Virus record (IMG/VR): IMGVR_UViG_3300049215_000771
Span: 310,001 to 374,000 of that record
Strand: one strand, 5' to 3'
Length of the DNA stretch: 64,000 bases
Under the pieces are notes generated by a model, which saw only the letters and a program-made list of their open reading frames with translations, was not told the DNA's origin and made no database searches. Made by a program: the position numbers and the translations under genes. Below, in pieces: positions 9,922-61,391 of this stretch; within the stretch, counting starts at the first letter, position 1; the number at the start of each line of letters is the position of its first letter.

Positions 9922-10358
9922 CGTTGAATGATATGATCGCCCTGCTCAATGGGGACTTGATGAACGAATGGAAGCATTTGCGCTTCTACCTGGCGAATGC
10001 CAGCCTGATGACTGGCCTGCACGCCCATGAGTACAAGGAGTTTCTGCTGAAGGCTGCTGAGGGGGAAATGGCCCATGTTGTTGCCTTCCAAGACCTGATT
10101 ATTGGACTTGGAGGGATGCCTACAACAGATAGCAACCCTTTCCTGACCACTTCTGACCCGACCGAGGTTGTAAAATTGGCCTTGGCGATGGAAGATGAGG
10201 TAGTGAAGAACTATGTACAACGGCAGGACGACGCCCGGAAGCTGGCGGCGACTGATCCGGTCAATGGGGGCTGGATTGATGTGTTCATGGACGGGCAAAT
10301 CCAAGACAGCAGGGAAGATGCTGACCATTTGCGGCAGATTTTGAAAGGCATCAAGTAA
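9918..10358 (+). CDS. Ferritin-like (bacterioferritin/Dps-type) protein
   Basis: NE..H..Y, EGEMAH, LGGMP, MEDEVV, EDADH diiron pattern; GGAGG RBS before ATG 9918. Confidence 0.8.
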   Translation: MTLNDMIALLNGDLMNEWKHLRFYLANASLMTGLHAHEYKEFLLKAAEGEMAHVVAFQDLIIGLGGMPTTDSNPFLTTSDPTEVVKLALAMEDEVVKNYVQRQDDARKLAATDPVNGGWIDVFMDGQIQDSREDADHLRQILKGIK

Positions 10359-10369
10359 AGGAGGGGTTC

Positions 10370-10912
10370 ATGCCGACCGAGAACGAACGCAAGTACGTTC
10401 TGAACGCCAAGTGCGAACGGGCCGTCGCTGACATGGCGATTCAGAAGTACGAAATCTCACAAGGTTATCTGATCGCCACACGAGGCATCACGGTGCGTGT
10501 GAGAAAGTCAGTTCCCGTATACGCCAACGGCAACAACAAAGGCGGATATTTCTTCACCATGAAAGTGAATACGGGCGGTCGGTGTGTGGAAGTAGAAAAC
10601 AAACTCGATAAGCGGGATTTTGATGACTTGTGGGCCATCTCCCTCAACAAGCTGGAGAAGATTCGCTATGATGTGCGGGCCGGCAAGTACCTGTGGGAGT
10701 GCGACTTCTTCAAGGACTACAAGGCTCAAACGTACATCGCTATTGCTGAGATCGAACTCCCCGAAGGCCAGATGGAACCCGATTCACTGCCTCCCTTCAT
10801 CAAGGACAACCTTCTATATCGAGTTGCATTGACAGACACAAGGTTCTCGAATAAGCTATTAGGTGATGCGAGGTATGCAGCCGATCTGCTTACCGAAATC
10901 ACCAAGAAATGA
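10370..10912 (+). CDS. CYTH domain protein (triphosphate tunnel metalloenzyme)
   Basis: ENERKY (ExExK), ISQGYL, VRVRK, EKIRY, WECDFF, AEIEL. Confidence 0.88.
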   Translation: MPTENERKYVLNAKCERAVADMAIQKYEISQGYLIATRGITVRVRKSVPVYANGNNKGGYFFTMKVNTGGRCVEVENKLDKRDFDDLWAISLNKLEKIRYDVRAGKYLWECDFFKDYKAQTYIAIAEIELPEGQMEPDSLPPFIKDNLLYRVALTDTRFSNKLLGDARYAADLLTEITKK

Positions 10913-10919
10913 GAACCCC

Positions 10920-11222
10920 ATGAAATACAACCTTGTACGAAACATGCCCGTGGCCCGTTTTTGGTACAAAGGGCATCACACCCATCCCGTGCGCCGGACC
11001 ATCCTGGTCATTGAATCGACCCCGCACCTGTTTGTCGGATATGAAGTCCGTGAAGGAAGGATTCTTCGTAAGTTGCAAGATGCTCCAATCAAAAGCTACA
11101 GGAAGGACAAGATCGCCAACACCTACTCGTTGCGCCCGGATGCGCCACTCCGTAGGGAGAACCCCAACGCCAGCACCCTCAAACGAGAGAAGTTGCTTAG
11201 TTTGATCGAAACCGGCTTCTAG
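10920..11222 (+). CDS. Hypothetical protein, WYL/SH3-like
   Basis: FWYKG...VRRTI..IE...VGY...IKSYRKDKI loosely resembles WYL domains. Confidence 0.4.
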   Translation: MKYNLVRNMPVARFWYKGHHTHPVRRTILVIESTPHLFVGYEVREGRILRKLQDAPIKSYRKDKIANTYSLRPDAPLRRENPNASTLKREKLLSLIETGF

Positions 11223-11235
11223 TCTTTCCGCAAGA

Positions 11236-11277
11236 AAACTGCTCGGCTCACTCCTACATAGGTGAGCCGAGCAGTTT
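11236..11277 (+). promoter_or_regulatory. Perfect 16-bp inverted repeat with TACATAG in the loop
   Basis: aaactgctcggctcac-tcctacatag-gtgagccgagcagttt, 6 nt before ATG 11284. Confidence 0.7.
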
Positions 11278-45342: not shown

Positions 45343-45753
45343 GTGGTAAAATCAAAACTTCACAAAACAATCATGCTTGATCCACATATCACAGAATTGA
45401 ACAAGAAAACCGAGGAAGAAGGCGGCATCAACGTATCGAAGCTGAAGCCCGGAACGAGAGTCATCGTCAAGACCAAGAACAGCATCTATGAAATGACGGT
45501 CATCAACGGAAACAGGATATGGCTGAAAGGGGGCAAGTATTTCCCCGAATTCGTCGAACGCTATTTCTTGGGGTCCACCTGGGGCGGCTCGTGTCTCAAA
45601 TTGCATTGGGTCGGCTACGACATGCGAATGGAATTCACAAACTCACACAACGGAGTTGTCGAAACCATTCGCACCAGTCGTGTCGAAGCCGCCACAATTT
45701 GCGGTGAAGGTTGGTCCTATGACCTCGATTGGCCTAGTCGTACCGATCCATGA
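45343..45753 (+). CDS. Hypothetical protein
   Basis: 136-aa ORF. Confidence 0.55.
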   Translation: MVKSKLHKTIMLDPHITELNKKTEEEGGINVSKLKPGTRVIVKTKNSIYEMTVINGNRIWLKGGKYFPEFVERYFLGSTWGGSCLKLHWVGYDMRMEFTNSHNGVVETIRTSRVEAATICGEGWSYDLDWPSRTDP

Positions 45754-46306
45754 TGAACTTCGGCATACGATGAACAATCGTGTGCAAGAACTCATACGCT
45801 CCACGGTTGCTGAACACGATTTCATGCCGACCCCGACAAAGATGCGCAGCACAATCGCAATCCAACGAGTTGAAGTATTCGCAGATAATCTTTGTTCCTT
45901 CCTCGCCGAACTTGTGCGTCCGTAGATAAGCCTTTCGCTTGCTTTTGCGTCCGGCATCCACGAACCAAATCATCCAGGCCACGTCATTGAGAATTTCCAA
46001 CGTCTCAGGCGTGATGATCTTCTTACCATCTTTGTAGAAACTTTCATACAATTCGTTGAATACAGGGTAAGCTATCGAGTAGCACCTGAAGGTGTTCTTG
46101 TCCCGTTTGATGACGTTTTCATCCATCTTGAAGAATTCATGCAGCCCAGCCGTTTTGTACAACAGCCAGTCGTAATCCCGATCACGCATCGCAAGATAGC
46201 AATTTTTTCCTCGTTCTGGTTTGATGATCGACGAACCGCCCAAAATCGTTCCGTACAACACCTGCTTCTGGTTGTTTTTCAACTCTGGTCCCAATTGATA
46301 TGTCAT
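45734..46306 (-). CDS. Free-standing LAGLIDADG homing endonuclease
   Basis: QVLYGTILGGSSI and IWFVDAG motifs; GGAGG RBS. Confidence 0.8.
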   Translation of the reverse strand: MTYQLGPELKNNQKQVLYGTILGGSSIIKPERGKNCYLAMRDRDYDWLLYKTAGLHEFFKMDENVIKRDKNTFRCYSIAYPVFNELYESFYKDGKKIITPETLEILNDVAWMIWFVDAGRKSKRKAYLRTHKFGEEGTKIICEYFNSLDCDCAAHLCRGRHEIVFSNRGAYEFLHTIVHRMPKFIMDRYD

Positions 46307-47952: not shown

Positions 47953-48513
47953 TTACTCACTTCCGGGGCTGTGGAACTTGATGTTTTTGTCAGCCCATTC
48001 GATTGCCATGTGAAGACCACGAGCGAGCAAGCCAACAAGTTGGGTGGGGTTGCCACTTCCCTCGATGGCGATGTTATCTCGTTCATTGTCTTCGATCCAA
48101 ACCAAAGCGAAGCACAAGTTATCTCGTTTCTTGAGTTCGCCGGCCATCTGGCGGATTGTAGTGAGTGACAGATCGGGCAAACCAAGTTCTTTCTGCTTGG
48201 CTTTCGCCAAAGTTCCTGTTTCCTGGATGGTAACGAACATCTTGGTCAGCACTTGGCAGCAACGAATACGAGACTCCTCATCCCCCTCTATAACAAGGTG
48301 GTAAGTCACGATTTCGGGGTTATTTTGGTCAGGGAAAGTCAGCAACTTGCAGCCATGTGTTTCAGTTATTTCAGTCACGAAGGAAGAAATAGCGGAAACA
48401 ATAGCTTGTCCATTGCATCGAAATGTAACATAGGTATCATTGTCGGAATCGGTTACGGTCAATCCTTGGAACCGTCCGATGGTTTCCAACAGAATGTCAA
48501 AATCCTTCATCAT
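47953..48513 (-). CDS. Hypothetical protein
   Basis: GGAGG RBS before MMKDF; ATGA coupling. Confidence 0.6.
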   Translation of the reverse strand: MMKDFDILLETIGRFQGLTVTDSDNDTYVTFRCNGQAIVSAISSFVTEITETHGCKLLTFPDQNNPEIVTYHLVIEGDEESRIRCCQVLTKMFVTIQETGTLAKAKQKELGLPDLSLTTIRQMAGELKKRDNLCFALVWIEDNERDNIAIEGSGNPTQLVGLLARGLHMAIEWADKNIKFHSPGSE

Positions 48514-49046
48514 CCCTCCAATAGACCGGCGTGGTCGAGCGATTGTACCAATTTGATTAGGTGCTTGCACATTCCCGGCATTTCCAGCGGGTTTGCCGGT
48601 GGTCCTCCCGCAGCTTCGTACCTTCTTCGCTTGCTTCCGTACAGCGACCGATCCAGGTGGTCATAGTAATTGAATCTCCACCTGAAATCAGCGCAGTCAC
48701 ATCTCAACAGTACGTCGTTTTCTGCATAGCTCAATCGTTCAAGCACATAATGCAATCCATCACTGGCTACAATCTCGACCCAATCCTGATGCTCCTTCTC
48801 AGGATGGTAGCGGACTTGTTTGAACAATACCATCGGCTGGTACACTTTCCCTGACTCACCACTCTCAGCAGTGCCCTTGATGAACAAAGTTTTCACGCCA
48901 ACGAACGGAGTCCAAGATAGCTCCACAATCTTCACAGGGTCTATGGCATGTTGCCTTTTTGTTGTGCGAGGAAACGCTGCCACCGTACTCTGGTAAAGAT
49001 CATTGAGAGAGGATTCGTCCAAGTGCATCCAGTCGATGAACCGCAT
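48510..49046 (-). CDS. SWIM zinc-finger protein with MRFIDW leader
   Basis: RCDCADF...CKHL. Confidence 0.7.
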   Translation of the reverse strand: MRFIDWMHLDESSLNDLYQSTVAAFPRTTKRQHAIDPVKIVELSWTPFVGVKTLFIKGTAESGESGKVYQPMVLFKQVRYHPEKEHQDWVEIVASDGLHYVLERLSYAENDVLLRCDCADFRWRFNYYDHLDRSLYGSKRRRYEAAGGPPANPLEMPGMCKHLIKLVQSLDHAGLLEG

Positions 49047-49089: not shown

Positions 49090-49401
49090 ATGAGCGAAAT
49101 TATCCAGTTTCCCGGACAACCGCAAGAATCCAAGCGCCCGGAAGGGAAGAAGAAGTTTGAAGTGAAGATGCGCAAGGCCAAGGGCGGCGGCATTGAGAAA
49201 GCCATCTTCATTGACGACGAACAACTTGATTGGGAGATCGACATGAACTCCTACATCGAGGCCATGAAGATGGGACCAATGTACCGTCGTGCCGTTCAGA
49301 AAGACATCGAGAAACATTTCATCGAAAGCCTCTCGGATTTCCTGGGCCGCAAGGTTACAATGGAAGAAATCAAAACAGCGATCAAAACAGGTTGGATTTG
49401 A
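49090..49401 (+). CDS. Hypothetical protein
   Basis: AGGAGG RBS. Confidence 0.65.
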   Translation: MSEIIQFPGQPQESKRPEGKKKFEVKMRKAKGGGIEKAIFIDDEQLDWEIDMNSYIEAMKMGPMYRRAVQKDIEKHFIESLSDFLGRKVTMEEIKTAIKTGWI

Positions 49402-49404
49402 TAT

Positions 49405-50670
49405 ATGATGAACCCAAACGAAGTCCACGAGGTAATGCGTGAGTATACCATCGGGGATGGAGAGCATATTGTAATCGACAGGGACCGTAGCTTGGGTTCA
49501 TACATGGCTGATGCTCGCACGGGTCGTCGCTACTTAGACTGCGCTTCGCAATTCGCCAGTCAGCCCCTTGGTTGGAACCATCACAAACTCAACGATAAAT
49601 GGAACTACCTGGGCCGGGCCGCAGTTCACAAATACGCCAACTCGGACTTCTACAGCACCGACCTCGCCGAGTTCGTTTTGGAATTCGCCAACATTACTCC
49701 CGACTTCAAATACCACTTCTTCATCGAAGGCGGCACCCTTGGCGTAGAGAATGCCCTCAAAGCAGCCTTCGACTGGAAAGCGCAAAAGCTGGGATTGTCG
49801 GAAGAACAAGCCAACGACCTGGATGTGATTCACTTCAAGCAAGCCTTCCACGGACGCAGTGGCTACACGCTCTCCCTTACCAACACCACGCCCAACAAAA
49901 CAGCGCTATTTCCGAAGTTCAAATGGACCAGGGTACTCAACCCAAAGATTCACTTCCCGATGGTAATTGAAGATGTGTTGGCTGCCGAGAAGGAAAGCAT
50001 CTATCAGATACTCACAGGCATAACTCGCAACTGCAAGAAAACAGCAGCTATTGTTGTCGAAAGCATCCAGGCCGAGGGCGGCGACAACCACTTCCGCCCG
50101 GAGTTCTTCAGGGAACTGCGCAAGATCGCCGATGCCCATGATGTCATGCTCATCATGGACGAAGTACAAACAGGGCTGGGACTCACGGGACAATTCTGGT
50201 GCTACCAGCATTACGGCATGGTGCCCGATATGATTTGCTTCGGGAAGAAAACGCAGGTGTGCGGTTTTTGTTCTACGGAGCGAATCGACGAAGTTGAAAA
50301 CAACGTGTTCCACGTTTCCAGTCGAATCAACTCGACATGGGGCGGCAACATCGTTGACATGGTTCGGGCTAAATACATCATCGACATCATCCTTGAAGAT
50401 GGTCTGACTGCTAATGCAGCAAACGTAGGAAGATTGTTCCTCAATAAACTTCAGAATATCCCAAGGATTACCAATGTGCGAGGGCGGGGCTTGTTCCTCG
50501 CCTTCGACTTGGAATCAGATGCAAGTCGCAACGACGTGCTGCATCTGATGAGCGATAAAATGATAGCGATGAAATGTGGGGAGCGCTCCATACGACTACG
50601 GCCCCACCTGACGTTCTCGGATGAGGACGCTGATGAGGCCGTGAAAATCATTACCGAAGCTGTAGTTTAG
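49405..50670 (+). CDS. lat: L-lysine 6-transaminase (class III PLP aminotransferase)
   Basis: FHGRSGYTLSLTNT, QAEGGDNHFR, DEVQTG, FGKKTQVCG, SRINSTWGGN. Confidence 0.92.
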   Translation: MMNPNEVHEVMREYTIGDGEHIVIDRDRSLGSYMADARTGRRYLDCASQFASQPLGWNHHKLNDKWNYLGRAAVHKYANSDFYSTDLAEFVLEFANITPDFKYHFFIEGGTLGVENALKAAFDWKAQKLGLSEEQANDLDVIHFKQAFHGRSGYTLSLTNTTPNKTALFPKFKWTRVLNPKIHFPMVIEDVLAAEKESIYQILTGITRNCKKTAAIVVESIQAEGGDNHFRPEFFRELRKIADAHDVMLIMDEVQTGLGLTGQFWCYQHYGMVPDMICFGKKTQVCGFCSTERIDEVENNVFHVSSRINSTWGGNIVDMVRAKYIIDIILEDGLTANAANVGRLFLNKLQNIPRITNVRGRGLFLAFDLESDASRNDVLHLMSDKMIAMKCGERSIRLRPHLTFSDEDADEAVKIITEAVV

Positions 50671-52493
50671 GCCCAAGTCCTGGGTCGCTTGTCTTTCCTG
50701 TAGGGCTTCAAAATCGACTCAAAGAAATCTTTGTCGCCACGATAAATTGTGTGATCCCTGCTGGTGTTCATATCGTTGCGATGTTGCTGCGCAAGGATGG
50801 CGGCAATCTTTTCGTGCTTTTGTTGATCGTTCAGGTTTTGATCCCTGTGAATCTTGGTGATCTCTGCCTTGGCGTCATCACTGATGCTCTTGTCCTGGAT
50901 GCCGCCGTTATCTATCGCCCAACGTAGTTTTCCGACATCTTCGGGACTCCAATCATTTGTAGTATCTGGTGCCGGTTGCGTACCGCCATTGGTTGTCGCA
51001 CCCGTCGAACCTGGGGCGGCGGGCGGCAATTTCCAAATACCACGCTGCCGCCAATCATCGAGTTTCTTTTCCATGTCATCAACCGAATTGATGCTGGAAG
51101 CCCATTGAGCAAGTTTATTTTTGGGAGCGTTATCCCAAATAATTCGAGCCAATTCTTTGCTATATTGCTGCGGATTGCCCCCATGTTTTTGCGCTAACTG
51201 AACTACAAAATCATTCAGTTTTTTCCCTTCTGGAGTTTCAAGATTCTTCATCTTGGCTTCGTCCTCCTCCGTACTGAGTTGCTGCGCAATAGCATGTCCA
51301 GGAGTGGATTGTGATTGCGCCCCAGGAGTGGATTGTGATTGCGCTGATGTATCTGGCCCGCCGATTGCTTTCATGATGGACTGAACATGCTTCATGAAGT
51401 CGGGGCCAAAATGTTGCAATTGCTGCTGATTATGCAGCAAAGCGGTCAACGCTTGGATGGCCTGGTTCTTGGCGTCTGTTTGAATTCCTTGTGCGGCCCT
51501 ATTCCAACCAGCACCGAATCCGCCCTGGCCGAATATGTTGCTGACACCACCCCACAATTTCTTACCCCAATCCCATTCGCTGATAACATCCTGGAACTCA
51601 TCAGGAGTAAGATACCGACCCTGCTTGATGTACCAATTGGCAAATGCCGCTGGATCGTGGCCGGTTTCGGCGAGCCTGTTACAAAGACGACGAATCTTCT
51701 GCTCAATCAACACATGCTGCAAGAACGGATTTTCTTGTGGGTTGTAATGCGATTTCTGAACCTGTGGTGCTGCTTGTGGTGCTTGTGGTGGTGCTTGTGG
51801 TGCTTGTGGTACTTGTTGTGGTGCTTGTGGTGGTGCTTGTGGTGGTGCTTGTGGTGCCGCTTGTGGCGGATTCTGCAACATGCCAATTACTGCATGAAGT
51901 GATCCGACAAAGGCTTGATTGTTTTTCAAATCATCGGGCAATTTCCCCGAAAGATTCTGCAACGCTTGCATGGCGTTACTGATTACACCTTGAATGGCCT
52001 GGTTCTGTTGTGGAGCCTGTCCAGCGGCACCTTGTTGCCCACCAGCTTGCCCGCCTCCCGCTTGCCCAGCGGGTTGACCAGAAGCATCTTGTCCTCCACC
52101 AAGGCCGAGGCCCGCTTTAGCGCCGCCCAACAAATGCCCACCTGCTGTGCCCAATGCACCACGAATAGCCCCACCACCAAGAGCCATAGCAGCACCGGGA
52201 ACAGCAGCAAGATGGCCGGCACCCGTCCCAACAGCCTGTCCTAACTGAGCAAAATTATCGTAGTTGACGTTTTTCTTCCACCAGTCGAGGACACGATTTT
52301 CGACCAGTAGCAATTCTTGCTGAAGCCATTGTTTGGATTGTTCGGGTGCATCTTCCTTGTAGAGAATGCCTTCCGTGGCAAACCACTCGACGAATTTGCG
52401 AGGGTTTACGCCACGGGAGGCCATCAAGGTGAAGGCTGTTTCAGCTAGATTATTCAGCCGTCGAGAGCCGATGTGTTGGGCAAAAGACCGCAT
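50667..52493 (-). CDS. Large Gln/Gly/Ala/Pro-rich protein, putative internal virion protein
   Basis: MRSFAQH leader; duplicated domain; low-complexity repeats. Confidence 0.65.
   Translation of the reverse strand: MRSFAQHIGSRRLNNLAETAFTLMASRGVNPRKFVEWFATEGILYKEDAPEQSKQWLQQELLLVENRVLDWWKKNVNYDNFAQLGQAVGTGAGHLAAVPGAAMALGGGAIRGALGTAGGHLLGGAKAGLGLGGGQDASGQPAGQAGGGQAGGQQGAAGQAPQQNQAIQGVISNAMQALQNLSGKLPDDLKNNQAFVGSLHAVIGMLQNPPQAAPQAPPQAPPQAPQQVPQAPQAPPQAPQAAPQVQKSHYNPQENPFLQHVLIEQKIRRLCNRLAETGHDPAAFANWYIKQGRYLTPDEFQDVISEWDWGKKLWGGVSNIFGQGGFGAGWNRAAQGIQTDAKNQAIQALTALLHNQQQLQHFGPDFMKHVQSIMKAIGGPDTSAQSQSTPGAQSQSTPGHAIAQQLSTEEDEAKMKNLETPEGKKLNDFVVQLAQKHGGNPQQYSKELARIIWDNAPKNKLAQWASSINSVDDMEKKLDDWRQRGIWKLPPAAPGSTGATTNGGTQPAPDTTNDWSPEDVGKLRWAIDNGGIQDKSISDDAKAEITKIHRDQNLNDQQKHEKIAAILAQQHRNDMNTSRDHTIYRGDKDFFESILKPYRKDKRPRTWA
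51298..51344. repeat. 24-bp tandem repeat (AQSQSTPG x2)
   Basis: ccaggagtggattgtgattgcgc twice. Confidence 0.85.
51763..51866. repeat. Coding low-complexity repeat (PQA/PPQA)n
   Basis: (g)gtgcttgtg array. Confidence 0.85.
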
Positions 52494-53283
52494 TCTGTTC
52501 TCCTACTGGTTCGTAATACTTCAGGCGTAGCGTAGCGAACGCCATAACCGGCATTTTTTCCTTTCGGTTATATACGAACCCCAATGCGTTATTTAGCCCG
52601 TCGTCCCAGGTTTTGAACCAAGACATCGGAACGTAGTAAGAACGACTAAAAATCGGTGGAGCAAATGGCGCAGGCGGGACACGGTATCTAACAGCAACGC
52701 CGATGACCTCGTTGTGTTTGTTGAAAAGCGGCCCTCCTGAATCTCCAGGAAGAATACAACAAGAAGTACGAATGAGTCCCTTGTTCATTGCCGGCGTTCT
52801 GGTGTATACTCCTGTGATCTTTCCATCATCAAAACAAGGGTCATCGGCCATAGCAAAACCAACTCTTTTCACAGGTTCGCCAAACTTCAATTGGTAACTG
52901 AACAAAGCAAGTTTCGCTACCTCCAGCCTATCTTTGCTTTCAAACAAAACAACAGCTAAATCTTTTTCTTGGCTGTGGGCGTAAACCGTGGCCGGGTAGC
53001 GAGTGAAACCCATCAATTTGCCATTTTTGTCATAGCTCATGACGTACACAGAAAATTCACTACTTTCAGCGGTGATGTGTTGACAAGTGATAGCGACGTT
53101 ACGATATTTTTCTCCGACAAGTTCAGACCTAACAACGAAGGCAGTGCCGTGTCCTCCTTCATTATCTACCAGCTTAACAACTGGCTTGAGGGTTTGCCTC
53201 AGTAGTTTTTCGGGAGCATCGCCACTAAATACTGGTGAAGTTGAGAGCAATAGCAAGAAGCTGCAAGCAAGATATTTCAACAT
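52450..53283 (-). CDS. Secreted trypsin-like serine protease (S1)
   Basis: Signal peptide; GTAFVV, TCQH, DLAVV, PGDSGGPL. Confidence 0.85.
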   Translation of the reverse strand: MLKYLACSFLLLLSTSPVFSGDAPEKLLRQTLKPVVKLVDNEGGHGTAFVVRSELVGEKYRNVAITCQHITAESSEFSVYVMSYDKNGKLMGFTRYPATVYAHSQEKDLAVVLFESKDRLEVAKLALFSYQLKFGEPVKRVGFAMADDPCFDDGKITGVYTRTPAMNKGLIRTSCCILPGDSGGPLFNKHNEVIGVAVRYRVPPAPFAPPIFSRSYYVPMSWFKTWDDGLNNALGFVYNRKEKMPVMAFATLRLKYYEPVGEQNAVFCPTHRLSTAE

Positions 53284-53306
53284 TGGTTTTCCAAGTTAAG
53301 GAGGAC

Positions 53307-53582
53307 ATGATGGAAAGGAACCATCTTTACGTCCTGATTTTGATTTTGGGCACGGCCCTGGGCGTAACCTACGTCAGCAAGACGAAGGGCGGAATCGACA
53401 AGATTTTCACCCCGTCAGCGCCGGCAAGGGATAGTTGGATGCGTGACGATCCAGGTTGGGATAGGATGCCACAACCGGCTCCTACTCCACCGGCTCCAGT
53501 TCCGCCAACGAATCCCACACCGCCGCCGACACCACCGACGCCGCCCCCGCAACAGCCACAACCAAGGCAATCACCTGGCTGA
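53307..53582 (+). CDS. Small membrane-anchored Pro-rich protein
   Basis: AAGGAGG RBS; TM helix + Pro tract. Confidence 0.6.
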   Translation: MMERNHLYVLILILGTALGVTYVSKTKGGIDKIFTPSAPARDSWMRDDPGWDRMPQPAPTPPAPVPPTNPTPPPTPPTPPPQQPQPRQSPG

Positions 53583-53668
53583 AGGGTTTGATCCATATTC
53601 GCAGTTGCGAATTCGACACCAAATCCTATATGATACTATAGTGAAGATCAACCACGAGGGTCAATATC

Positions 53669-54934
53669 ATGGGGATGTTAGAAGAAGCAAAAAAGCAGCT
53701 TGATGCTGCGGCCCAATATGCAGAAATCGACCCTGAAAGTTGGGAAAGACTTCAATATCCGCAAAAAACCCTAAATGTCGTAATCCCAATGCGACATGAT
53801 GACGGAACGCTGAAGATGTATAAAGCGTACCGTTGCCAATACGACACAACGCTCGGCCCGGCGAAGGGAGGTATTCGTTACCATCCCAACGTCTGTCGGG
53901 ATCACTGCGAGGCGTTGGCGTTCTGGATGACATTCAAATGCGCTGCCTTGAAGCTCCCCTTCGGGGGAGCCAAAGGCGGCATTTGTGTTGACGCCACGAA
54001 ACTTTCACATCGAGAGTTGGAGCGTCTGAGCAAATCATACATCATTGCCTTCGCCGACTTCATCGGTCCCGACGAAGACATCCCTGCTCCTGATCTATAC
54101 ACAGATGAAAGGATCATGGGCTGGATGTACCAACAATATCGCCAGATCAAAGGCGGGCACCCGAAAGACATCGTAACCGGCAAACCAACGGCTTTGGGTG
54201 GAATCGAGGGGCGAAATTCGGCGACAGGTTACGGCGGGTACTACTGCCTGGAAACGATATTGAACTCAAATATGGGTCCGCCCAATATCCCTCCCAATCT
54301 CGACGATATTCGAGTTGCCATCCAGGGCTTCGGCAAAGTGGGATATTGGTTTGCCGAGAAATGTTTCCGACAAGGGTTGAAAGTCGTCGCCCTCAGCAAT
54401 GAGTTCGGCGGCTGCTACTGCGAACACGGCATCAATGTCGCCGCCGCTCGCAAATGCCTGGATGAGAGTGGAGGCAAGGAGTGGGGGCAGGGAGACAAGC
54501 TAACCAACGATGAACTCCTTCAAATGAACGTGGATTTGTTGGTTCCTGCCGCCATTGAGAATGTGTTGACCAAAGATAATGCTGGCAAGGTGCAAGCAAA
54601 GATGATTTTGGAATTGGCGAACGGCCCTACTACAAATGAGGCCGACGCCATTTTGAATGACAAAGGGGTATTTGTCATTCCCGACATCCTGGCGAACGCC
54701 GGGGGAGTCGTTGTTTCTTACTTCGAGTGGCTTCAGAACAGGACGGCTCGCAACTGGACTTTGGAGCAGGTAGATGATGACTTGAAGAAGATGATGGACT
54801 ATGCCACAGAAAAAACTCTGGCCTACAAAGTGAAGCACAAAATCTCGGCCAGAACAGCGGCATATGTACTGGCCTTGAGGCGAATCAATGCGGCCAACGC
54901 CTGTCTTGGGAACAAAGGTTATTTTCAGCGTTGA
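53669..54934 (+). CDS. gdhA: Glu/Leu/Phe/Val dehydrogenase (glutamate dehydrogenase)
   Basis: GPAKGGIRYHP, GGAKGG, DIPAPD, QGFGKVG, ANGPTT, PDILANAGGVVVSYFEW. Confidence 0.95.
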   Translation: MGMLEEAKKQLDAAAQYAEIDPESWERLQYPQKTLNVVIPMRHDDGTLKMYKAYRCQYDTTLGPAKGGIRYHPNVCRDHCEALAFWMTFKCAALKLPFGGAKGGICVDATKLSHRELERLSKSYIIAFADFIGPDEDIPAPDLYTDERIMGWMYQQYRQIKGGHPKDIVTGKPTALGGIEGRNSATGYGGYYCLETILNSNMGPPNIPPNLDDIRVAIQGFGKVGYWFAEKCFRQGLKVVALSNEFGGCYCEHGINVAAARKCLDESGGKEWGQGDKLTNDELLQMNVDLLVPAAIENVLTKDNAGKVQAKMILELANGPTTNEADAILNDKGVFVIPDILANAGGVVVSYFEWLQNRTARNWTLEQVDDDLKKMMDYATEKTLAYKVKHKISARTAAYVLALRRINAANACLGNKGYFQR

Positions 54935-56195: not shown

Positions 56196-56999
56196 ATGAG
56201 CAGAATTAGACCAGCTTTCAAGTGTCATGGTGGGAAATACTACCTGTCCGAGTGGATTATCTCACATTTCCCTGAGAACTACAAAGACTACACCTACATC
56301 GAGCCTTACTGCGGTGGGGCCAATATCCTCATCAACAAGGAAAAATCGCCCCTTGAGGCCATTTCCGACACCGATCTCACTGTCATTCAAATCTTTCGGG
56401 CTTTGCGAGACGAGCCGAAGGAATTTGCACGCCGTTTGAACCTGATGAAATACTGTCAGGAAACCTTCGACCGGGCGGTAAAACGTCAAAATGGACCGTT
56501 TGACGATTATCTCGATCAAGCGATCAACGAATATGTCTTGCGGCGCATGTCCCGTGGTGGCTTGCGAAAGGCTTTTGCCTGGAGCAACCGGCTACGAGGA
56601 GGGCAGCCCGGAGATGTAAATGCGTGGAAAACGGCTTTGGCCCAGCTTCCGATCCTGGCCGAGCGTATGAAGGAAGTTTACATTTTCAACAAGCCTGCAC
56701 TGGAGGTTATCAAAACCTTCAACACGAAAAACGTGCTGGTCTATGCTGATCCACCGTACCTACATGACACCCGGCACAGCAAGAATGTTTACGCCAACGA
56801 GATGACCATCGACGATCATATCGAACTGTCCAGGGTTCTCAACACCTTCGCCGGGAAAGTTGTTCTCAGCGGCTACCCATCTCCGTTGTACACCAGGCTT
56901 TATCAGAACTGGAATTGCGAGAAGAAGAAGGTCGCCAACCACTCGTCTCAAGCCAGGGCGAAGGAAGTCAAGACTGAGATGATCTGGAAGAACTTCTGA
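56196..56999 (+). CDS. dam: D12-class N6-adenine DNA methyltransferase (Dam-like)
   Basis: GGK..L, YIEPYCGG, SD, YADPPY, SGY. Confidence 0.92.
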   Translation: MSRIRPAFKCHGGKYYLSEWIISHFPENYKDYTYIEPYCGGANILINKEKSPLEAISDTDLTVIQIFRALRDEPKEFARRLNLMKYCQETFDRAVKRQNGPFDDYLDQAINEYVLRRMSRGGLRKAFAWSNRLRGGQPGDVNAWKTALAQLPILAERMKEVYIFNKPALEVIKTFNTKNVLVYADPPYLHDTRHSKNVYANEMTIDDHIELSRVLNTFAGKVVLSGYPSPLYTRLYQNWNCEKKKVANHSSQARAKEVKTEMIWKNF

Positions 57000-59369: not shown

Positions 59370-61391
59370 ATGGCAGAAGAAGAAAGAATTGTAAACCGCA
59401 ATACCAGGCAATCCTACCATGACAAAATCAAGGCAGCGTTGGCAAAAAAACCAACTTCCGCTATGATAAACAATCGTGCGATGCCAGTGCAAGAACTGAA
59501 CAAGATAATTACCAACCAAACACCGACCGTCGAGCCGGTGCAACCAGTTCAGCGTCGAGTCATAAGAAATGTAAGAAAGAAAAGGGCTATGGAACGCCGT
59601 CCGGCAACAGCCATAATGCCCTACACAGAAGCGAAAAGTGATCCGGCCCCTATGCCAGAAGCCTATCTCTACAGTGTGCCAGAATGGTTCACACCAAAAA
59701 CGAAACCGAAAATTTCGGTAATCATTCCGTTGTTCAAAAGCAACGCTGTAGTGACCGATCAAATCAAAACGTGGATTCATGAGAAAGACATTGACGTAGA
59801 AATCATCTATGTCGATGACAACTGCCCCACCAACTCCAAAGCCACTGTACTGAAGGCGTGGGAAGATCGTGGCGAGAAGAAACCAGTAGGTAAAATCGTA
59901 GCAAACCGTGAGAATGTGGGCTACGGACGAGCGTGCAACGTCGGGGCACTTCATGCTAGTGGCGATTATCTTATCTTCCTCAACTCAGATACCAAAGTTA
60001 CTGAGGGGTGGATCAAACCTATGCTCGATTTGTTCGACAACCCCAAAGTAGGGATCGTCGGCAACTTGCATCTGAAGGAAGGTGGGCCGCACCACAACAC
60101 TGTGGACAGTGCTGGTTCTGCCTGGAACTGGTCAAGCATGTATTTTGAACACATCGGGCGGCATCATTACAAAGGCGCTCACCTATCCCAACCCTTCGCT
60201 TATCCAAACCTACCAGAAGACCTGCGTGGCGTCAGCGAACGTGAGATGGTAACTGGTTGTTGCTTCATGACTCCCGCCAAAGTGTTCAATGAAGTAGATG
60301 GTTTCGATCCGAGGTATCGAATCGGGTATTGGGAAGATTCGGACTTGTGCATGAAAGTCCGAGAATTAGGTTACAAGATTTTGTTTCAACCAAGGAGCAT
60401 CATATGGCACAAGTTGTCACACTCTGGAGCGGCGGGCCACGCTCACTACCGAGAAAACACAGACTTCTTCCGCAATCGTTGGTACAACAGCGGGAGAGTG
60501 GACAAACTCCTGTTCACGCCAAGGCCAGGCGGTCCTCCCGTGGTCAAAAACATCCTGGTCAAACGAATTGCGGCCAACGGAGATGTGCTGATGGCAACAT
60601 CAATCCTTCCGGCCCTCAAGAAGAAATGGCCTAAAGCAACGATTACTTTCTGGACGGGATGTGAACAAATTTTGTTTGGGCACCCAATGATCGACAAGAT
60701 CGTATCGTTCAATCCCAAGCAACAGTTCGATTACGTCGTCAACCTCGATCTTGCTTACGAGTATCACCCAACCTGGTCCATTCTCAAAAGCTATGCTTTC
60801 GAGGCCGGTGTTCCAGTTGAAGATTGCAAAGCGTACATGGCTACTAAACCATTGCGTTGGCAACTTCCCAAACCCTACATCGTAATGCACGCCAAGCGAG
60901 AAGAAGGATTTGGTTGGGCTGGGCGCAACTGGAAGGGAGATCGCTTCACTGACATCGCCGACCGGCTGCGGAAAGAAGGACACAACATTGTCCTAGTCGG
61001 CGGGCCTGGAGATTGGCAGTTGCCCCACGACCTAGACCTGCGTGGCCGGACAAATCCACAAGAACTTGCAGCAATCATGAAGGATGCCAGCTTCTTTGTC
61101 GGGATGGATTCCATGCCAATGCACATGGCACAAATTTTTGGCGTCCCTGGCGTCGTATTCTTTGGGAGCATATTGCCAAAATACAGGCTAACAGGAAGTA
61201 GGCTTCACCCGATCAATGCAACGCACCTGGACTGTCTTGGGTGTCACCACAAATCCAAACCACCCTCGATAGGAACGAGTTCATGCGCCAGGGGCGATTT
61301 CGCTTGTGAATATGACATCACTGTTGATATGTTCTGGAACAAAATCAAGGAAGTAATGAACGGTAAGAAAACATGGCTACCAGTGGTATGA
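59370..61391 (+). CDS. Fused GT2 + GT9 (heptosyltransferase-like) glycosyltransferase
   Basis: ISVIIP, VDD, N.GY..ACN, FLNSD, EDSDLC (GT2); GDVLMAT..L.ALK, GMDS.PMH.A...GVP.V..FG (GT9). Confidence 0.9.
   Translation: MAEEERIVNRNTRQSYHDKIKAALAKKPTSAMINNRAMPVQELNKIITNQTPTVEPVQPVQRRVIRNVRKKRAMERRPATAIMPYTEAKSDPAPMPEAYLYSVPEWFTPKTKPKISVIIPLFKSNAVVTDQIKTWIHEKDIDVEIIYVDDNCPTNSKATVLKAWEDRGEKKPVGKIVANRENVGYGRACNVGALHASGDYLIFLNSDTKVTEGWIKPMLDLFDNPKVGIVGNLHLKEGGPHHNTVDSAGSAWNWSSMYFEHIGRHHYKGAHLSQPFAYPNLPEDLRGVSEREMVTGCCFMTPAKVFNEVDGFDPRYRIGYWEDSDLCMKVRELGYKILFQPRSIIWHKLSHSGAAGHAHYRENTDFFRNRWYNSGRVDKLLFTPRPGGPPVVKNILVKRIAANGDVLMATSILPALKKKWPKATITFWTGCEQILFGHPMIDKIVSFNPKQQFDYVVNLDLAYEYHPTWSILKSYAFEAGVPVEDCKAYMATKPLRWQLPKPYIVMHAKREEGFGWAGRNWKGDRFTDIADRLRKEGHNIVLVGGPGDWQLPHDLDLRGRTNPQELAAIMKDASFFVGMDSMPMHMAQIFGVPGVVFFGSILPKYRLTGSRLHPINATHLDCLGCHHKSKPPSIGTSSCARGDFACEYDITVDMFWNKIKEVMNGKKTWLPVV

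What the first reader, a model, noticed from the sequence alone, without database searches (positions are those of the whole stretch)
49405..54934. Lysine 6-transaminase plus glutamate dehydrogenase: a possible coupled amino-acid catabolic pair
Seen: near full-length lat and gdhA about 3 kb apart, with an S1 protease between them. Established: Lat transfers the lysine epsilon-amino group to 2-oxoglutarate giving glutamate, and GDH regenerates 2-oxoglutarate with NAD(P)H and ammonium; in mycobacteria Lat is linked to persistence. Inference: with the exported peptidases this forms a protein-to-amino-acid-to-N/redox pipeline that may keep starved hosts productive.
Basis: partly seen in the sequence, partly recalled or inferred. 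Interest (0 to 1): 0.65.

Follow-up and report, generated by a model that had tools for sequence, protein, structure and literature searches.

The report
Huge-phage lysine transaminase and glutamate dehydrogenase
A giant bacteriophage from a moss metagenome carries intact genes for a lysine-type aminotransferase and a glutamate dehydrogenase. Related huge phages have kept the two genes side by side, which suggests, but does not prove, a virus-encoded way to move amino-acid nitrogen into the glutamate pool.

Summary
Window 49405-50670 (+) encodes a full-length LAT-family class-III aminotransferase. Window 53669-54934 (+) encodes a full-length glutamate dehydrogenase. A 608-aa low-complexity ORF and a signal-peptide-bearing trypsin-like (S1) protease lie between them on the minus strand.

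The window sits deep inside a T4-like huge phage: a record of at least 533 kb whose exact proteins also occur on a 673-kb contig from a moss metagenome.

Both enzymes keep every catalytic and substrate-binding residue checked. Each falls in a phage-only clade, 47-53% (Lat) and at most 47% (GDH) identical to the nearest sampled cellular homologues, so no donor can be named. The two genes are co-inherited (distance matrices r = 0.88).

In 54 loci anchored on a backbone gene, 15 had both genes, 7 had Lat only, 32 had neither and none had GDH only. None of 80 cellular Lat loci had a GDH nearby.

The two genes are separate insertions on either side of the protease, not one operon. The protease persists in relatives that lack both enzymes. 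GDH direction and cofactor are unknown. The phylogeny-corrected co-occurrence test is underpowered.

Verdict: a real, conserved and apparently undescribed phage auxiliary metabolic pair. Coupling through glutamate/2-oxoglutarate is plausible but unproven. The "protease pipeline" idea is not supported.

The parts
48510..49046 (-). Backbone gene orf178. It has a conserved C-x-C...C-x-H pattern that looks like a SWIM zinc finger (read by eye; no family scan matched). It was used as the anchor for unbiased sampling of the neighbourhood.
   Evidence: Alignment A2 has 61% mean column identity, with invariant R115 C116 C118 D120 F121 ... C160 K161 H162. No Pfam or NCBIfam hit. Present in 80 IMG/VR loci whether or not they carry Lat or GDH.
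49090..49401 (+). Backbone gene orf132. The likely true start is the ATG at 49090, giving 103 aa. It ends 4 nt before the Lat start.
   Evidence: tblastn finds homologues next to orf178 in loci with and without Lat. No Pfam hit. A 103-aa gene is called at the same place in L057.
49405..50670 (+). LAT-family class-III (PLP) aminotransferase, 421 aa; most likely L-lysine 6-transaminase.
   Evidence: PF00202, 274 bits. TIGR03251, 507 bits (cut-off 520.8). PDB 2CIN, 9e-109. K281, D252, Q255, E224, R151, R397, T311, S310 and N309 correspond to Mtb K300, D271, Q274, E243, R170, R422, T330, S329 and N328. dN/dS is 0.053 against L057.
50670..50686 (+). Terminator-like hairpin directly after the Lat stop codon.
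   Evidence: Consensus scan only; terminator-like sites are not enriched over shuffles.
50667..52493 (-). 608-aa Gly/Ala/Gln/Pro-rich low-complexity ORF, convergent with Lat. Weakly conserved and present in only some relatives.
   Evidence: No Pfam, NCBIfam or PHROG hit. Sequence. Short tblastn matches of 26-44% identity in relatives.
52450..53283 (-). Secreted trypsin-like (S1, Trypsin_2) serine protease, 277 aa. It is a backbone gene, not specific to the pair.
   Evidence: PF13365, 1e-20. N-terminus MLKYLACSFLLLLSTSPVFSG. The TCQHI, KDLAVV and GDSGGP motifs are present. It is also found in relatives that lack Lat and GDH.
53307..53582 (+). Small ORF with an AAGGAGG ribosome-binding site, one hydrophobic helix and a proline-rich tail.
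   Evidence: Sequence read. tblastn homologues of 39% identity in L012 and L033.
53605..53642 (+). Two overlapping sigma-70-like promoter matches just upstream of GDH.
   Evidence: Consensus scan; promoter-like sites are not enriched over shuffles.
53669..54934 (+). Glutamate dehydrogenase, 421 aa, of the ~420-aa hexameric type.
   Evidence: PF02812 plus PF00208. PDB 1GTM, 9e-106. K66, K90, K102, D142 and S350 are conserved in 19/19 phage and 34/34 cellular GDHs. Asn244 and Lys223 are clade-specific.
56196..56999 (+). Dam-type N6-adenine DNA methyltransferase, the downstream backbone anchor of the syntenic block.
   Evidence: PF02086, 2.7e-20. Syntenic in relatives.

Best explanation
Lat and GDH are two accessory (auxiliary metabolic) genes of a lineage of T4-like huge phages. 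They sit in two neighbouring insertion sites, one on each side of a backbone protease gene.

Shown:
- Both are intact, catalytically competent by sequence, and under purifying selection.
- Each is monophyletic among phages, and the two are co-inherited.
- In the backbone-anchored sample, GDH at this locus occurs only where Lat is, or was, present.

Inferred mechanism:
- The enzymes are linked through their shared substrate pair. Lat transfers the epsilon-amino group of L-lysine to 2-oxoglutarate, giving glutamate plus 2-aminoadipate semialdehyde, which cyclises to piperideine-6-carboxylate (P6C).
- GDH interconverts glutamate with 2-oxoglutarate, ammonium and NAD(P)H.
- Together they would open the otherwise poorly accessible lysine side-chain nitrogen to the cell's central nitrogen donors (glutamate and ammonium, then glutamine) and buffer 2-oxoglutarate. 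This would matter while a phage of more than 0.5 Mb makes very nitrogen-costly progeny in a nitrogen-poor habitat.

Open: whether GDH runs oxidatively (recycling 2-oxoglutarate and yielding NAD(P)H plus ammonium) or reductively (adding a second route into glutamate). The phage encodes no enzyme for the P6C product.
For: Phage context:
- TerL, gp20 portal and gp23 capsid genes lie in the same window. The window is at 310-374 kb of a 533-kb virus record.

Enzyme identity and active sites.

Synteny:
- Lat...GDH...Dam is found in contigs of 20 kb to 693 kb, at 46-63% Lat and 63-79% GDH identity, while the genes between them vary (ORF608, trypsin, thioredoxin, Fe-S_biosyn).

Phylogeny:
- 42 phage Lats form one clade (SH-aLRT 100) against the 80 nearest cellular Lats.
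- 19 phage GDHs form one clade on a long stem (SH-aLRT 100) against 34 cellular GDHs.
- No GDH above 47% identity was found in 40 plus 121 sampled genomes.

Co-inheritance and selection:
- Lat and GDH distance matrices correlate at r = 0.88, Mantel p about 0.0005.
- Lat dN/dS is 0.053.

Co-occurrence:
- Anchored sample of 54 loci: both 15, Lat only 7, GDH only 0, neither 32.
- 0 of 80 cellular Lat loci have a GDH within 8 kb.

Expression:
- Exact-match contigs on Lat and on GDH occur in the same moss/plant metatranscriptome libraries.
Against: - The two genes are not one operon. Minus-strand genes separate them, and terminator- and promoter-like signals lie between them.
- The whole region is collinear: Dam and the glycosyltransferase are equally syntenic. 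Adjacency alone therefore does not show selection for linkage.
- Lat exists without GDH in at least 7 loci and in LR756511.1. GDH exists without Lat in a 97%-complete 430-kb phage and in L169.
- The phylogeny-corrected pair test has only 2-3 independent contrasts and cannot reach significance.
- The own genome has no aldehyde dehydrogenase, P5C/P6C reductase, glutamine synthetase or asparagine synthase to extend a pathway.
- The RNA-library contigs could be DNA carry-over.
- Lat scores 14 bits under the curated LAT cut-off.
- No biochemical data exist.
Confidence: 0.5

Rival explanations
1. The two are independent auxiliary genes that are neighbours only because this part of the genome is collinear across the lineage and tolerates insertions. 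GDH acts alone on the host glutamate/2-oxoglutarate/ammonium node, for nitrogen assimilation or for manipulating 2-oxoglutarate signalling. Lat works with host enzymes.
For: - The insertion sites are separate, on either side of the protease. The transcription units are separate.
- GDH-Dam adjacency is just as conserved, with no obvious functional link.
- Each gene occurs alone in some phages.
- Phage nitrogen-assimilation AMGs acting singly (glutamine synthetase, asparagine synthase) are described.
Against: - In the anchored sample, GDH at this locus was never found without Lat or a Lat remnant: 15 against 0.
- The intervening genes turn over while both enzymes stay.
- The two reactions share both co-substrates, which is a stoichiometric fit.
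Confidence: 0.27
2. A Roc-like arginine/ornithine catabolic module. The aminotransferase acts on ornithine (RocD-like) and GDH plays the RocG role, so that arginine nitrogen is converted to glutamate and ammonium.
For: - In marine T4-like phages the same phage Lat clade sits in a block of glyoxalase, aldehyde dehydrogenase, arginine-dihydrolase-like gene (NF052232, 208 bits), Lat and NDP-sugar dehydrogenase. This reads as Arg -> Orn -> semialdehyde -> Glu.
- B. subtilis RocG and GudB are among the closest solved GDHs.
- R151, E224 and R397 are generic to omega-aminotransferases. This point rests on established knowledge, not on a test here.
Against: - The LAT model scores 507 bits against 146 bits for ornithine aminotransferase TIGR01885.
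- All 16 Mtb LAT active-site and pocket positions are occupied as in cellular LATs. No column separates the phage clade from the cellular clade.
- The own genome has no arginase, arginine-dihydrolase-like gene or aldehyde dehydrogenase.
Confidence: 0.13
3. A biosynthetic use. GDH supplies glutamate as the amino donor, and the aminotransferase aminates an aldehyde or keto precursor of a phage-specific product, such as a modified surface sugar, polyamine or DNA modification. The nearby glycosyltransferases and methyltransferases would belong to the same pathway.
For: - A GT2/GT9 fusion at 59370-61391 and Dam lie downstream.
- Relatives carry further glycosyl- and methyltransferases nearby.
- The GDH cofactor-site changes are compatible with an NADPH-dependent, glutamate-forming enzyme.
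Against: - The aminotransferase is not of the sugar-aminotransferase (DegT) type. It keeps the lysine/2-oxoglutarate recognition set.
- The glycosyltransferase block is present in relatives without Lat or GDH.
Confidence: 0.06
4. The genes are host DNA, either the flank of a provirus or a chimeric assembly, and not phage genes.
For: IMG/VR labels the record 'provirus'. The record is shorter (533 kb) than the 673-kb contig that carries the identical proteins.
Against: - The genes lie 177 kb or more from either end of the record.
- Capsid, portal and terminase genes are 20-40 kb away, and phage-only ORFs flank the pair.
- The same block occurs in dozens of independent phage contigs.
- Both proteins fall in phage-only clades.
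- GC content shows no break across the region.
Confidence: 0.02

Closest known systems
L-lysine 6-transaminase (Lat; M. tuberculosis Rv3290c, PDB 2CIN/2CJD; TIGR03251)
   Same: Full-length alignment (E = 9e-109) with the same fold class. The PLP lysine, the Asp that binds N1, the Glu switch, both arginines and the Thr/Ser/Asn contributed by the partner subunit are all conserved.
   Different: It scores 507 bits against the 520.8 trusted cut-off. It belongs to a phage-only clade outside the 80 nearest cellular LATs (47-53% identity). In cells, Lat is sometimes paired with an aldehyde dehydrogenase (12 of 80 loci) and never with GDH. This phage has no aldehyde dehydrogenase.
Hexameric ~420-aa glutamate dehydrogenases (P. 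furiosus 1GTM, T. maritima 2TMG, B. subtilis RocG 3K92)
   Same: Both ELFV domains are present. The catalytic Lys, the Lys/Lys/Ser that recognise glutamate, and the Asp are conserved.
   Different: At most 47% identity to any sampled cellular GDH, with a long stem branch. Asp->Asn at the end of the second Rossmann strand and Asn->Lys in the GxGxxG loop are clade-specific. It scores below the lineage-specific NCBIfam equivalog cut-offs.
Phage auxiliary metabolic genes for nitrogen assimilation (e.g. phage-borne glutamine synthetase and asparagine synthase in rumen phages, PMC13196213)
   Same: Host-like central nitrogen-metabolism enzymes carried inside phage genomes and proposed to support nucleotide and protein synthesis during infection.
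   Different: The enzymes differ. Here it is a two-gene set that is old, phage-specific and conserved across a lineage of 300-700-kb phages. I found no paper describing Lat, or Lat plus GDH, in phages.
B. subtilis Roc pathway (RocF arginase, RocD ornithine aminotransferase, RocA P5C dehydrogenase, RocG GDH)
   Same: The same logic of an omega-aminotransferase followed by a GDH. The marine phage sister cluster adds an arginine-dihydrolase-like gene and an aldehyde dehydrogenase.
   Different: By sequence the aminotransferase is a LAT, not an ornithine aminotransferase. No arginase, arginine dihydrolase or aldehyde dehydrogenase was found in this phage.
Uncultured huge phage LR756511.1 (595 kb; accession series of Al-Shayeb et al. 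2020, Nature 578:425)
   Same: The only clearly phage record in the GenBank phage collection with this Lat (57% identity), preceded by the same orf132 homologue. Most other hits were weak matches (about 30% identity or less) to other transaminases.
   Different: No GDH anywhere in the record at E <= 1e-5. The protease and Dam are rearranged about 8 kb away.

Membership tests
L-lysine 6-transaminase (TIGR03251 / EC 2.6.1.36) | Full-length class-III (fold-type I) aminotransferase domain | tested here: met
   PF00202, 274 bits, model positions 7-403 of 403.
L-lysine 6-transaminase (TIGR03251 / EC 2.6.1.36) | Score at or above the curated equivalog cut-off (520.8 bits) | tested here: not met
   507.0 bits, 14 bits short. 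The next-best family scores 217 bits. The marine phage relative scores 471 bits.
L-lysine 6-transaminase (TIGR03251 / EC 2.6.1.36) | PLP Schiff-base Lys (Mtb K300), Asp271, Gln274, and Thr330/Ser329/Asn328 from the partner subunit | tested here: met
   K281, D252, Q255, T311, S310 and N309. Conserved in 41-42 of 42 phage Lats, except N309 (37 of 42).
L-lysine 6-transaminase (TIGR03251 / EC 2.6.1.36) | Glu243 switch with Arg422, and Arg170 binding the substrate carboxylate | tested here: met
   E224, R397 and R151. These residues are shared with other omega-aminotransferases, so they do not prove lysine specificity.
L-lysine 6-transaminase (TIGR03251 / EC 2.6.1.36) | Placement inside the clade of cellular LATs | tested here: inconclusive
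   The phage sequences form a clade separated from the 80 nearest cellular LATs by a branch with SH-aLRT 100. The tree is unrooted, so they may be a sister group or a fast-evolving member.
L-lysine 6-transaminase (TIGR03251 / EC 2.6.1.36) | Catalyses lysine epsilon-transamination to 2-oxoglutarate | not testable with these tools
   Needs an enzyme assay.
Glutamate dehydrogenase (ELFV family, EC 1.4.1.2-4) | N-terminal dimerisation domain plus C-terminal NAD(P)-binding domain | tested here: met
   PF02812, 174 bits, plus PF00208, 217 bits.
Glutamate dehydrogenase (ELFV family, EC 1.4.1.2-4) | Catalytic Lys (bovine K126) and Asp (C. symbiosum D165) | tested here: met
   K102 in GGAKGG and D142 in PAPD, conserved in 19/19 phage and 34/34 cellular sequences. 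The residue correspondence comes from motif knowledge.
Glutamate dehydrogenase (ELFV family, EC 1.4.1.2-4) | Glutamate-specific side-chain recognition (Lys in GPxKGG, Ser in VSYFEW) rather than the hydrophobic residues of Leu/Phe/Val dehydrogenases | tested here: met
   K66 and S350 are invariant.
Glutamate dehydrogenase (ELFV family, EC 1.4.1.2-4) | NCBIfam equivalog cut-offs (GdhA_Arch 750 bits, GdhB_Halo 620 bits, PRK09414 536 bits) | tested here: not met
   427, 428 and 238 bits. These models are lineage-specific, so this shows only that the phage GDH is not one of those orthologue groups.
Glutamate dehydrogenase (ELFV family, EC 1.4.1.2-4) | Coenzyme specificity and physiological direction | tested here: inconclusive
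   Asn244 replaces the Asp/Glu found in 34/34 cellular sequences. Lys223 replaces Asn in GFGNVG. This suggests NADP(H) by general Rossmann-fold rules, but GDHs have known exceptions.
Phage auxiliary metabolic gene | Host-type metabolic gene inside a bona fide phage genome, flanked by phage genes on both sides | tested here: met
   TerL, portal and gp23 lie in the window. ORFans, Dam and a homing endonuclease flank the pair. The locus is 177 kb or more from the record ends.
Phage auxiliary metabolic gene | Conserved in related phages and under purifying selection | tested here: met
Phage auxiliary metabolic gene | Expressed during infection | tested here: inconclusive
   Exact short contigs occur in four metatranscriptome libraries. 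They are unstranded contigs, and DNA carry-over is not excluded.
Single operon / mobile two-gene cassette | Adjacent, same strand, no intervening opposite-strand genes, gained and lost together | tested here: not met
   Two minus-strand genes and one small plus-strand ORF lie between them. The insertion sites are separate. Lat-only loci exist.
Roc-type arginine/ornithine catabolism | Arginase or arginine dihydrolase, ornithine aminotransferase, and P5C dehydrogenase present | tested here: not met
   No PF00491, PF19420 or PF00171 in the 533-kb record. The ornithine aminotransferase model scores 146 bits against a 378-bit cut-off. The record may lack about 140 kb of the original contig.
S1 (Trypsin_2 / HtrA-core) serine protease | His/Asp/Ser triad motifs and an export signal | tested here: met
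   PF13365, 75 bits. The TCQHI, KDLAVV and GDSGGP motifs and the N-terminal MLKYLACSFLLLLSTSPVFSG were read from the sequence. No signal-peptide predictor was available.

The most novel reading that the evidence does not exclude
An ancient, phage-specific 'basic amino acid nitrogen salvage' toolkit. A LAT-family transaminase lineage has lived in T4-like phages long enough to lose any traceable donor. It has been wired into two different partnerships: with a cofactor-shifted (possibly NADP-type) GDH in 300-700-kb megaphages of soils, mosses and lakes, and with an arginine-dihydrolase-like enzyme plus an aldehyde dehydrogenase in marine T4-like phages. In both cases, nitrogen locked in lysine or arginine side chains would be converted into glutamate and ammonium for virion production in nitrogen-poor habitats.
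Probability: 0.3. Interest if true: 0.65.

Novelty: new variant of a known kind. Interest (0 to 1): 0.5.

Why it matters
Phage auxiliary metabolic genes are known for photosynthesis, carbon, phosphorus and sulphur metabolism and some nitrogen-assimilation steps. A conserved transaminase-plus-dehydrogenase pair at the glutamate/2-oxoglutarate node has not, as far as I could find, been described.

If the pair is functional, the largest known phages reprogramme the host's central nitrogen hub. They would tap lysine nitrogen, which ordinary transaminases cannot reach.

This gives a concrete, testable handle on three questions:
- how megaphages pay the nitrogen cost of genomes above 0.5 Mb;
- how virus-driven nitrogen flux works in nitrogen-limited systems such as moss and peat;
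- how metabolic genes persist and re-partner inside phage lineages.

If the two genes turn out to be unlinked, this remains an ordinary annotation of two AMGs.

Tried and rejected
- **Host contamination or provirus flank.** Rejected on position, flanking genes, recurrence in phage contigs, and the trees.
- **Recent capture from an identifiable donor.** Rejected for the genomes sampled. The best cellular Lat is 53% identical and spread over many phyla. The best cellular GDH is 47% identical among 40 Lat-bearing genomes and 121 Bacteroidota. GDH sampling of other phyla was limited.
- **Changed Lat substrate pocket.** No active-site or clade-discriminating column was found.
- **A longer phage-encoded pathway.** No aldehyde dehydrogenase, P5C reductase, glutamine synthetase, asparagine synthase, arginase, DDAH-like gene or second class-III transaminase in the 533-kb record. 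There is one class-I glutamine amidotransferase ORF elsewhere.
- **Single operon.** Rejected.
- **Protease as part of the module.** Rejected as unsupported, because the protease persists without the pair.
- **Phylogenetically corrected co-occurrence test.** Run, but underpowered: 2-3 contrasts, none in the opposite direction.
- **dN/dS for GDH and for distant Lat pairs.** dS was saturated, so there is no estimate.
- **Cluster names and accessions for taxonomy.** None were returned.
- **Literature.** No report of the pair in phages.
- **Promoter and terminator scans.** Not enriched over shuffles, so they are only weak support.
- **Not used.** The large representative protein search, structure prediction and complex prediction, because sequence matches to solved structures left neither enzyme open and no physical binding is claimed.

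Full report
**1. What is there**

ORF 49405-50670:
- It matches Aminotran_3 over its whole length, 274 bits.
- In NCBIfam it matches the L-lysine 6-transaminase equivalog TIGR03251 at 507 bits. That is 14 bits under the curated cut-off and far above the next family, eukaryotic GABA transaminase at 217 bits.
- Its best solved relative is M. tuberculosis Lat (2CIN), E = 9e-109 over residues 3-419.

ORF 53669-54934:
- It carries both ELFV dehydrogenase domains.
- It aligns end to end with the Pyrococcus, Thermotoga and Bacillus glutamate dehydrogenases, around E = 1e-105.

Between them, on the minus strand, lie two genes:
- a 608-codon Gly/Ala/Gln/Pro-rich ORF with no family;
- a 277-codon Trypsin_2 protease.

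A small plus-strand ORF (53307-53582) follows, with a strong AAGGAGG ribosome-binding site, one hydrophobic helix and a Pro-rich tail.

**2. Context**

The window is positions 310,001-374,000 of a 532,729-bp IMG/VR virus record.
- The window itself holds a T4-type large terminase, a gp20 portal and a gp23 major capsid protein.
- The flanks of the pair are ORFans, a LAGLIDADG endonuclease, a Dam methylase and a GT2/GT9 glycosyltransferase.
- GC content shows no break across the region.
- The record has 56 tRNA genes and starts inside a tRNA array.
- The identical Lat and GDH proteins are on record on a 673,178-bp contig. The 'provirus' label therefore probably reflects trimming of a megaphage contig.
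- The DNA comes from moss metagenomes.

The genes are phage genes, not host flank.

**3. Are the enzymes what they seem?**

For Lat, I mapped the residues that a review of the Mtb structures lists for the PLP site and the lysine/2-oxoglutarate site through the HMMER alignment:

| Mtb LAT | Window Lat |
|---|---|
| K300 | K281 |
| D271 | D252 |
| Q274 | Q255 |
| E243 (the 'switch') | E224 |
| R170 | R151 |
| R422 | R397 |
| T330 / S329 / N328 | T311 / S310 / N309 |
| F167 / H168 | F148 / H149 |
| E238 | E219 |

- Across 42 phage and 80 cellular LAT-family sequences these positions have the same occupants. No alignment column separates phage from cellular proteins.
- Window Lat against its 92%-identical relative gives dN/dS = 0.053.
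- Lysine is therefore the best-supported substrate. The recognition residues are, however, shared with other omega-aminotransferases, and the score is marginally sub-threshold, so specificity is inferred and not shown.

For GDH:
- The three lysines (K66 in GPAKGG, K90, and the catalytic K102 in GGAKGG), D142, and S350 in VSYFEW are invariant in 19 phage and 34 cellular sequences. K66 and S350 distinguish glutamate dehydrogenases from Leu/Phe/Val dehydrogenases.
- Two clade-specific changes sit in the dinucleotide fold. The acidic residue at the end of the second strand (Asp or Glu in 34/34 cellular sequences) is Asn244 in 18/19 phage enzymes. GFGNVG has become GFGKVG in 16/19.
- By general Rossmann-fold rules this points toward NADP(H). 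GDHs are known to break those rules, so I treat it only as a hint.

**4. Relatives and co-occurrence**

*Public phage collection.* Of 53 records with a Lat match, only LR756511.1 (595 kb, uncultured phage) is clearly a phage relative, at 57% identity. Most other matches are weak (about 30% identity or less), and many look like bacterial contigs filed as phage. LR756511.1 has no GDH.

*Large protein collection.* Both proteins have more than 100 close clusters. Many sit on the same contigs.

*Contigs with the block.* Fetching contigs showed a recurring block: orf178(-) orf132(+) Lat(+) [ORF608-like(-)] [Trypsin_2(-)] [thioredoxin / Fe-S_biosyn(+)] GDH(+) ... Dam ... GT2/GT9.
- It occurs in records of 20 kb to 693 kb.
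- It persists down to 46% Lat and 63% GDH identity.

*Unbiased sample.* I aligned the backbone gene orf178, which has a SWIM-zinc-finger-like Cys/His pattern (A2), and fetched 80 IMG/VR loci with it. Among 54 distinct loci with at least 7 kb on the relevant side:

| Content | Loci |
|---|---|
| Lat and GDH | 15 (in one, Lat is only a 173-aa fragment) |
| Lat only | 7 |
| GDH only | 0 |
| Neither | 32 |

- Among the neither-loci, those within the syntenic lineage usually still read orf178 - orf132 - [protease] - Dam. The most distant orf178 homologues show no synteny.
- Lat and GDH are therefore separate insertions on either side of the protease, and the protease does not depend on them.

*Whole-record checks.* Two phages (98% complete) have neither gene. 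One 430-kb phage (97% complete) has GDH elsewhere and no Lat. Another GDH sits alone in a different phage context.

*Cellular genomes.* The 80 closest Lat loci never had a GDH within 8 kb. Twelve had an aldehyde dehydrogenase next door.

*Phylogeny-aware test.* The independent-pairs test found only 2-3 usable contrasts, none in the opposite direction, and cannot reach significance.

**5. Phylogeny**

- All 42 phage Lats form one clade (SH-aLRT 100) apart from the 80 nearest cellular Lats. Those cellular sequences come from Acidobacteriota, Gemmatimonadota, Bacteroidota, Ignavibacteriota, Planctomycetota, Thermoplasmatota and others, at 47-53% identity.
- All 19 phage GDHs form one clade on a long stem. 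No GDH above 47% identity was found in 40 Lat-bearing genomes or in 121 sampled Bacteroidota.
- The internal topologies resemble each other. Pairwise distances correlate at r = 0.88 (Mantel p about 0.0005), and each correlates with the backbone gene at r = 0.75.

Both genes are therefore old residents of this phage lineage, inherited together. The patchy distribution is better read as repeated loss. The Lat fragment in L179 and the loss of the catalytic-lysine column in L036 fit that reading. No donor taxon can be named. The trees are unrooted, and GDH sampling outside a few phyla was limited.

**6. A second phage context for the same Lat clade**

Nineteen distinct Lat sequences from marine T4-like phage contigs (rIIB nearby) nest within the phage Lat clade (SH-aLRT 98). 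There the gene sits in a block of glyoxalase, aldehyde dehydrogenase, arginine-dihydrolase-like gene (NF052232, 208 bits), Lat and NDP-sugar dehydrogenase.

This cluster reads as a harvest of nitrogen from basic amino acids. It has two consequences:
- It supports a nitrogen-salvage role for the phage Lat lineage.
- It raises the rival that the enzyme acts on ornithine (Arg -> Orn -> glutamate semialdehyde -> Glu, the Roc logic, with RocG being a GDH).

The window phage itself has no arginase, arginine-dihydrolase-like gene or aldehyde dehydrogenase.

**7. Transcription**

- Lat and GDH are on the same strand but separated by convergent and divergent genes. A terminator-like hairpin follows Lat, and promoter-like hexamers precede GDH. 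Such sites are not enriched over shuffles.
- Four moss/plant metatranscriptome libraries contain short, exact contigs on orf132/Lat, ORF608, the protease, the small ORF and GDH. Two libraries hold both Lat and GDH pieces.
- These contigs are unstranded and DNA carry-over is not excluded. Expression is therefore possible but not shown.

**8. Mechanism**

*Shown:* two intact, conserved, co-inherited enzymes whose textbook reactions share both co-substrates.

*Inferred:*
- Lat moves lysine's epsilon-nitrogen onto 2-oxoglutarate. The reaction is pulled by cyclisation of the semialdehyde to P6C.
- GDH then takes one of two roles. It may oxidise the glutamate, giving net lysine + NAD(P)+ -> P6C + ammonium + NAD(P)H. 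Host glutamine synthetase could use that ammonium, and the reductant could serve deoxynucleotide synthesis. Alternatively it may fix ammonium into further glutamate with NADPH.

Either way the pair channels nitrogen to the donors needed for nucleotides and protein, in a phage of more than 0.5 Mb from a nitrogen-poor habitat.

The fate of P6C is left to the host. No phage gene for it was found in the 533 kb held, though about 140 kb of the original contig is not in the record.

I put about 0.5 on functional coupling of this kind, 0.27 on independent roles, 0.13 on ornithine/arginine catabolism, and the remainder on biosynthetic use or artefact.

**9. Comparison and novelty**

- Each protein is an ordinary member-like relative of a well-known family. 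Lat fails the curated cut-off by 14 bits. GDH fails only lineage-specific equivalogs.
- Phage nitrogen-assimilation AMGs are known.
- I found no description of Lat, or of Lat plus GDH, in phages, including in the huge-phage papers checked.

I rate it a new variant of a known kind, of moderate interest. The protease pipeline, co-expression and starvation-rescue parts are not supported by anything I could test.

Noticed in passing
whole genome G000 (tRNAs at 145-121540 and 472882-497080 of the record; outside the window): The record has 56 tRNA genes, including three with anticodon CTA and one with TCA (suppressor-like). No Lys, His or Cys tRNA was called. The record begins inside a tRNA array, and the identical proteins sit on a 673,178-bp contig, so the IMG/VR 'provirus' is probably a trimmed megaphage contig. 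All window genes read open under table 11, and no other code was applied.
   Followed up: partly
L055:4449-9354, L056, L006-L022 and other marine IMG/VR contigs: Marine T4-like phages carry the same phage Lat lineage in a block of glyoxalase, aldehyde dehydrogenase, arginine-dihydrolase-like gene, Lat and NDP-sugar dehydrogenase. This may be an arginine/ornithine (or lysine) to glutamate nitrogen-harvest cluster.
   Followed up: partly
window 20903-23470 (+): The gp20-type portal gene is 855 codons long. It has an Intein_splicing match (33.7 bits, just under the 35.8 cut-off) in residues 157-335, ahead of the portal domain, so it may contain an intein.
   Followed up: no
window 45734-46306 (-): A LAGLIDADG_2 homing endonuclease. 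Relatives carry similar endonucleases beside short gp23-like fragments a few kb upstream of Lat.
   Followed up: no
L057 (ENA contig of 933,350 bp), Lat at 10001-11236: The closest Lat (92% identity), with the same orf205/orf178/orf132 neighbours, lies 1.6 kb from the end of a 933-kb contig. That contig is either a very large phage genome or a concatemeric assembly.
   Followed up: no
window 53669-54934, residues 223 and 244: Two substitutions are specific to the phage GDH clade. Asp/Glu -> Asn244 occurs in 18/19 phage and 0/34 cellular sequences. Asn -> Lys223 in the GxGxxG loop occurs in 16/19 phage and 0/34 cellular sequences. Both suggest a shift in coenzyme preference.
   Followed up: partly
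L036 / L211 (Lat) and L179:8943-9461: One Lat-only relative has FGDKVQ in place of FGKKTQ, so the catalytic-lysine column holds Asp. Another keeps only a 173-aa Lat fragment beside an intact GDH. Both are signs of decay or loss in some lineages.
   Followed up: partly
window 50667-52493 (-), around 51764-51857: ORF608 has PQAPPQAPQ-type repeats. RNA-library contigs show a 3-nt deletion at 51785 and many loose ends there, which points to strain variation or cross-matching of low-complexity sequence.
   Followed up: no
window 8776-9921 (+); relatives L002, L170, L259, L260: An M28 peptidase with an N-terminal hydrophobic segment lies next to the terminase. Relatives carry S8 and M14 peptidases downstream of the glycosyltransferase. 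This lineage encodes several probably exported peptidases.
   Followed up: no
L004, L170, L259, L260 (between Lat and GDH): A DsbH-type thioredoxin directly upstream of GDH, and HesB/IscA-like Fe-S_biosyn genes after Lat, recur in relatives. Both are absent from the window.
   Followed up: no
G000:C1:436586-437269 (-), outside the window: A 555-codon ORF with a class-I glutamine amidotransferase domain. It may be a CTP-synthase-like nucleotide-synthesis enzyme that consumes glutamine nitrogen.
   Followed up: no
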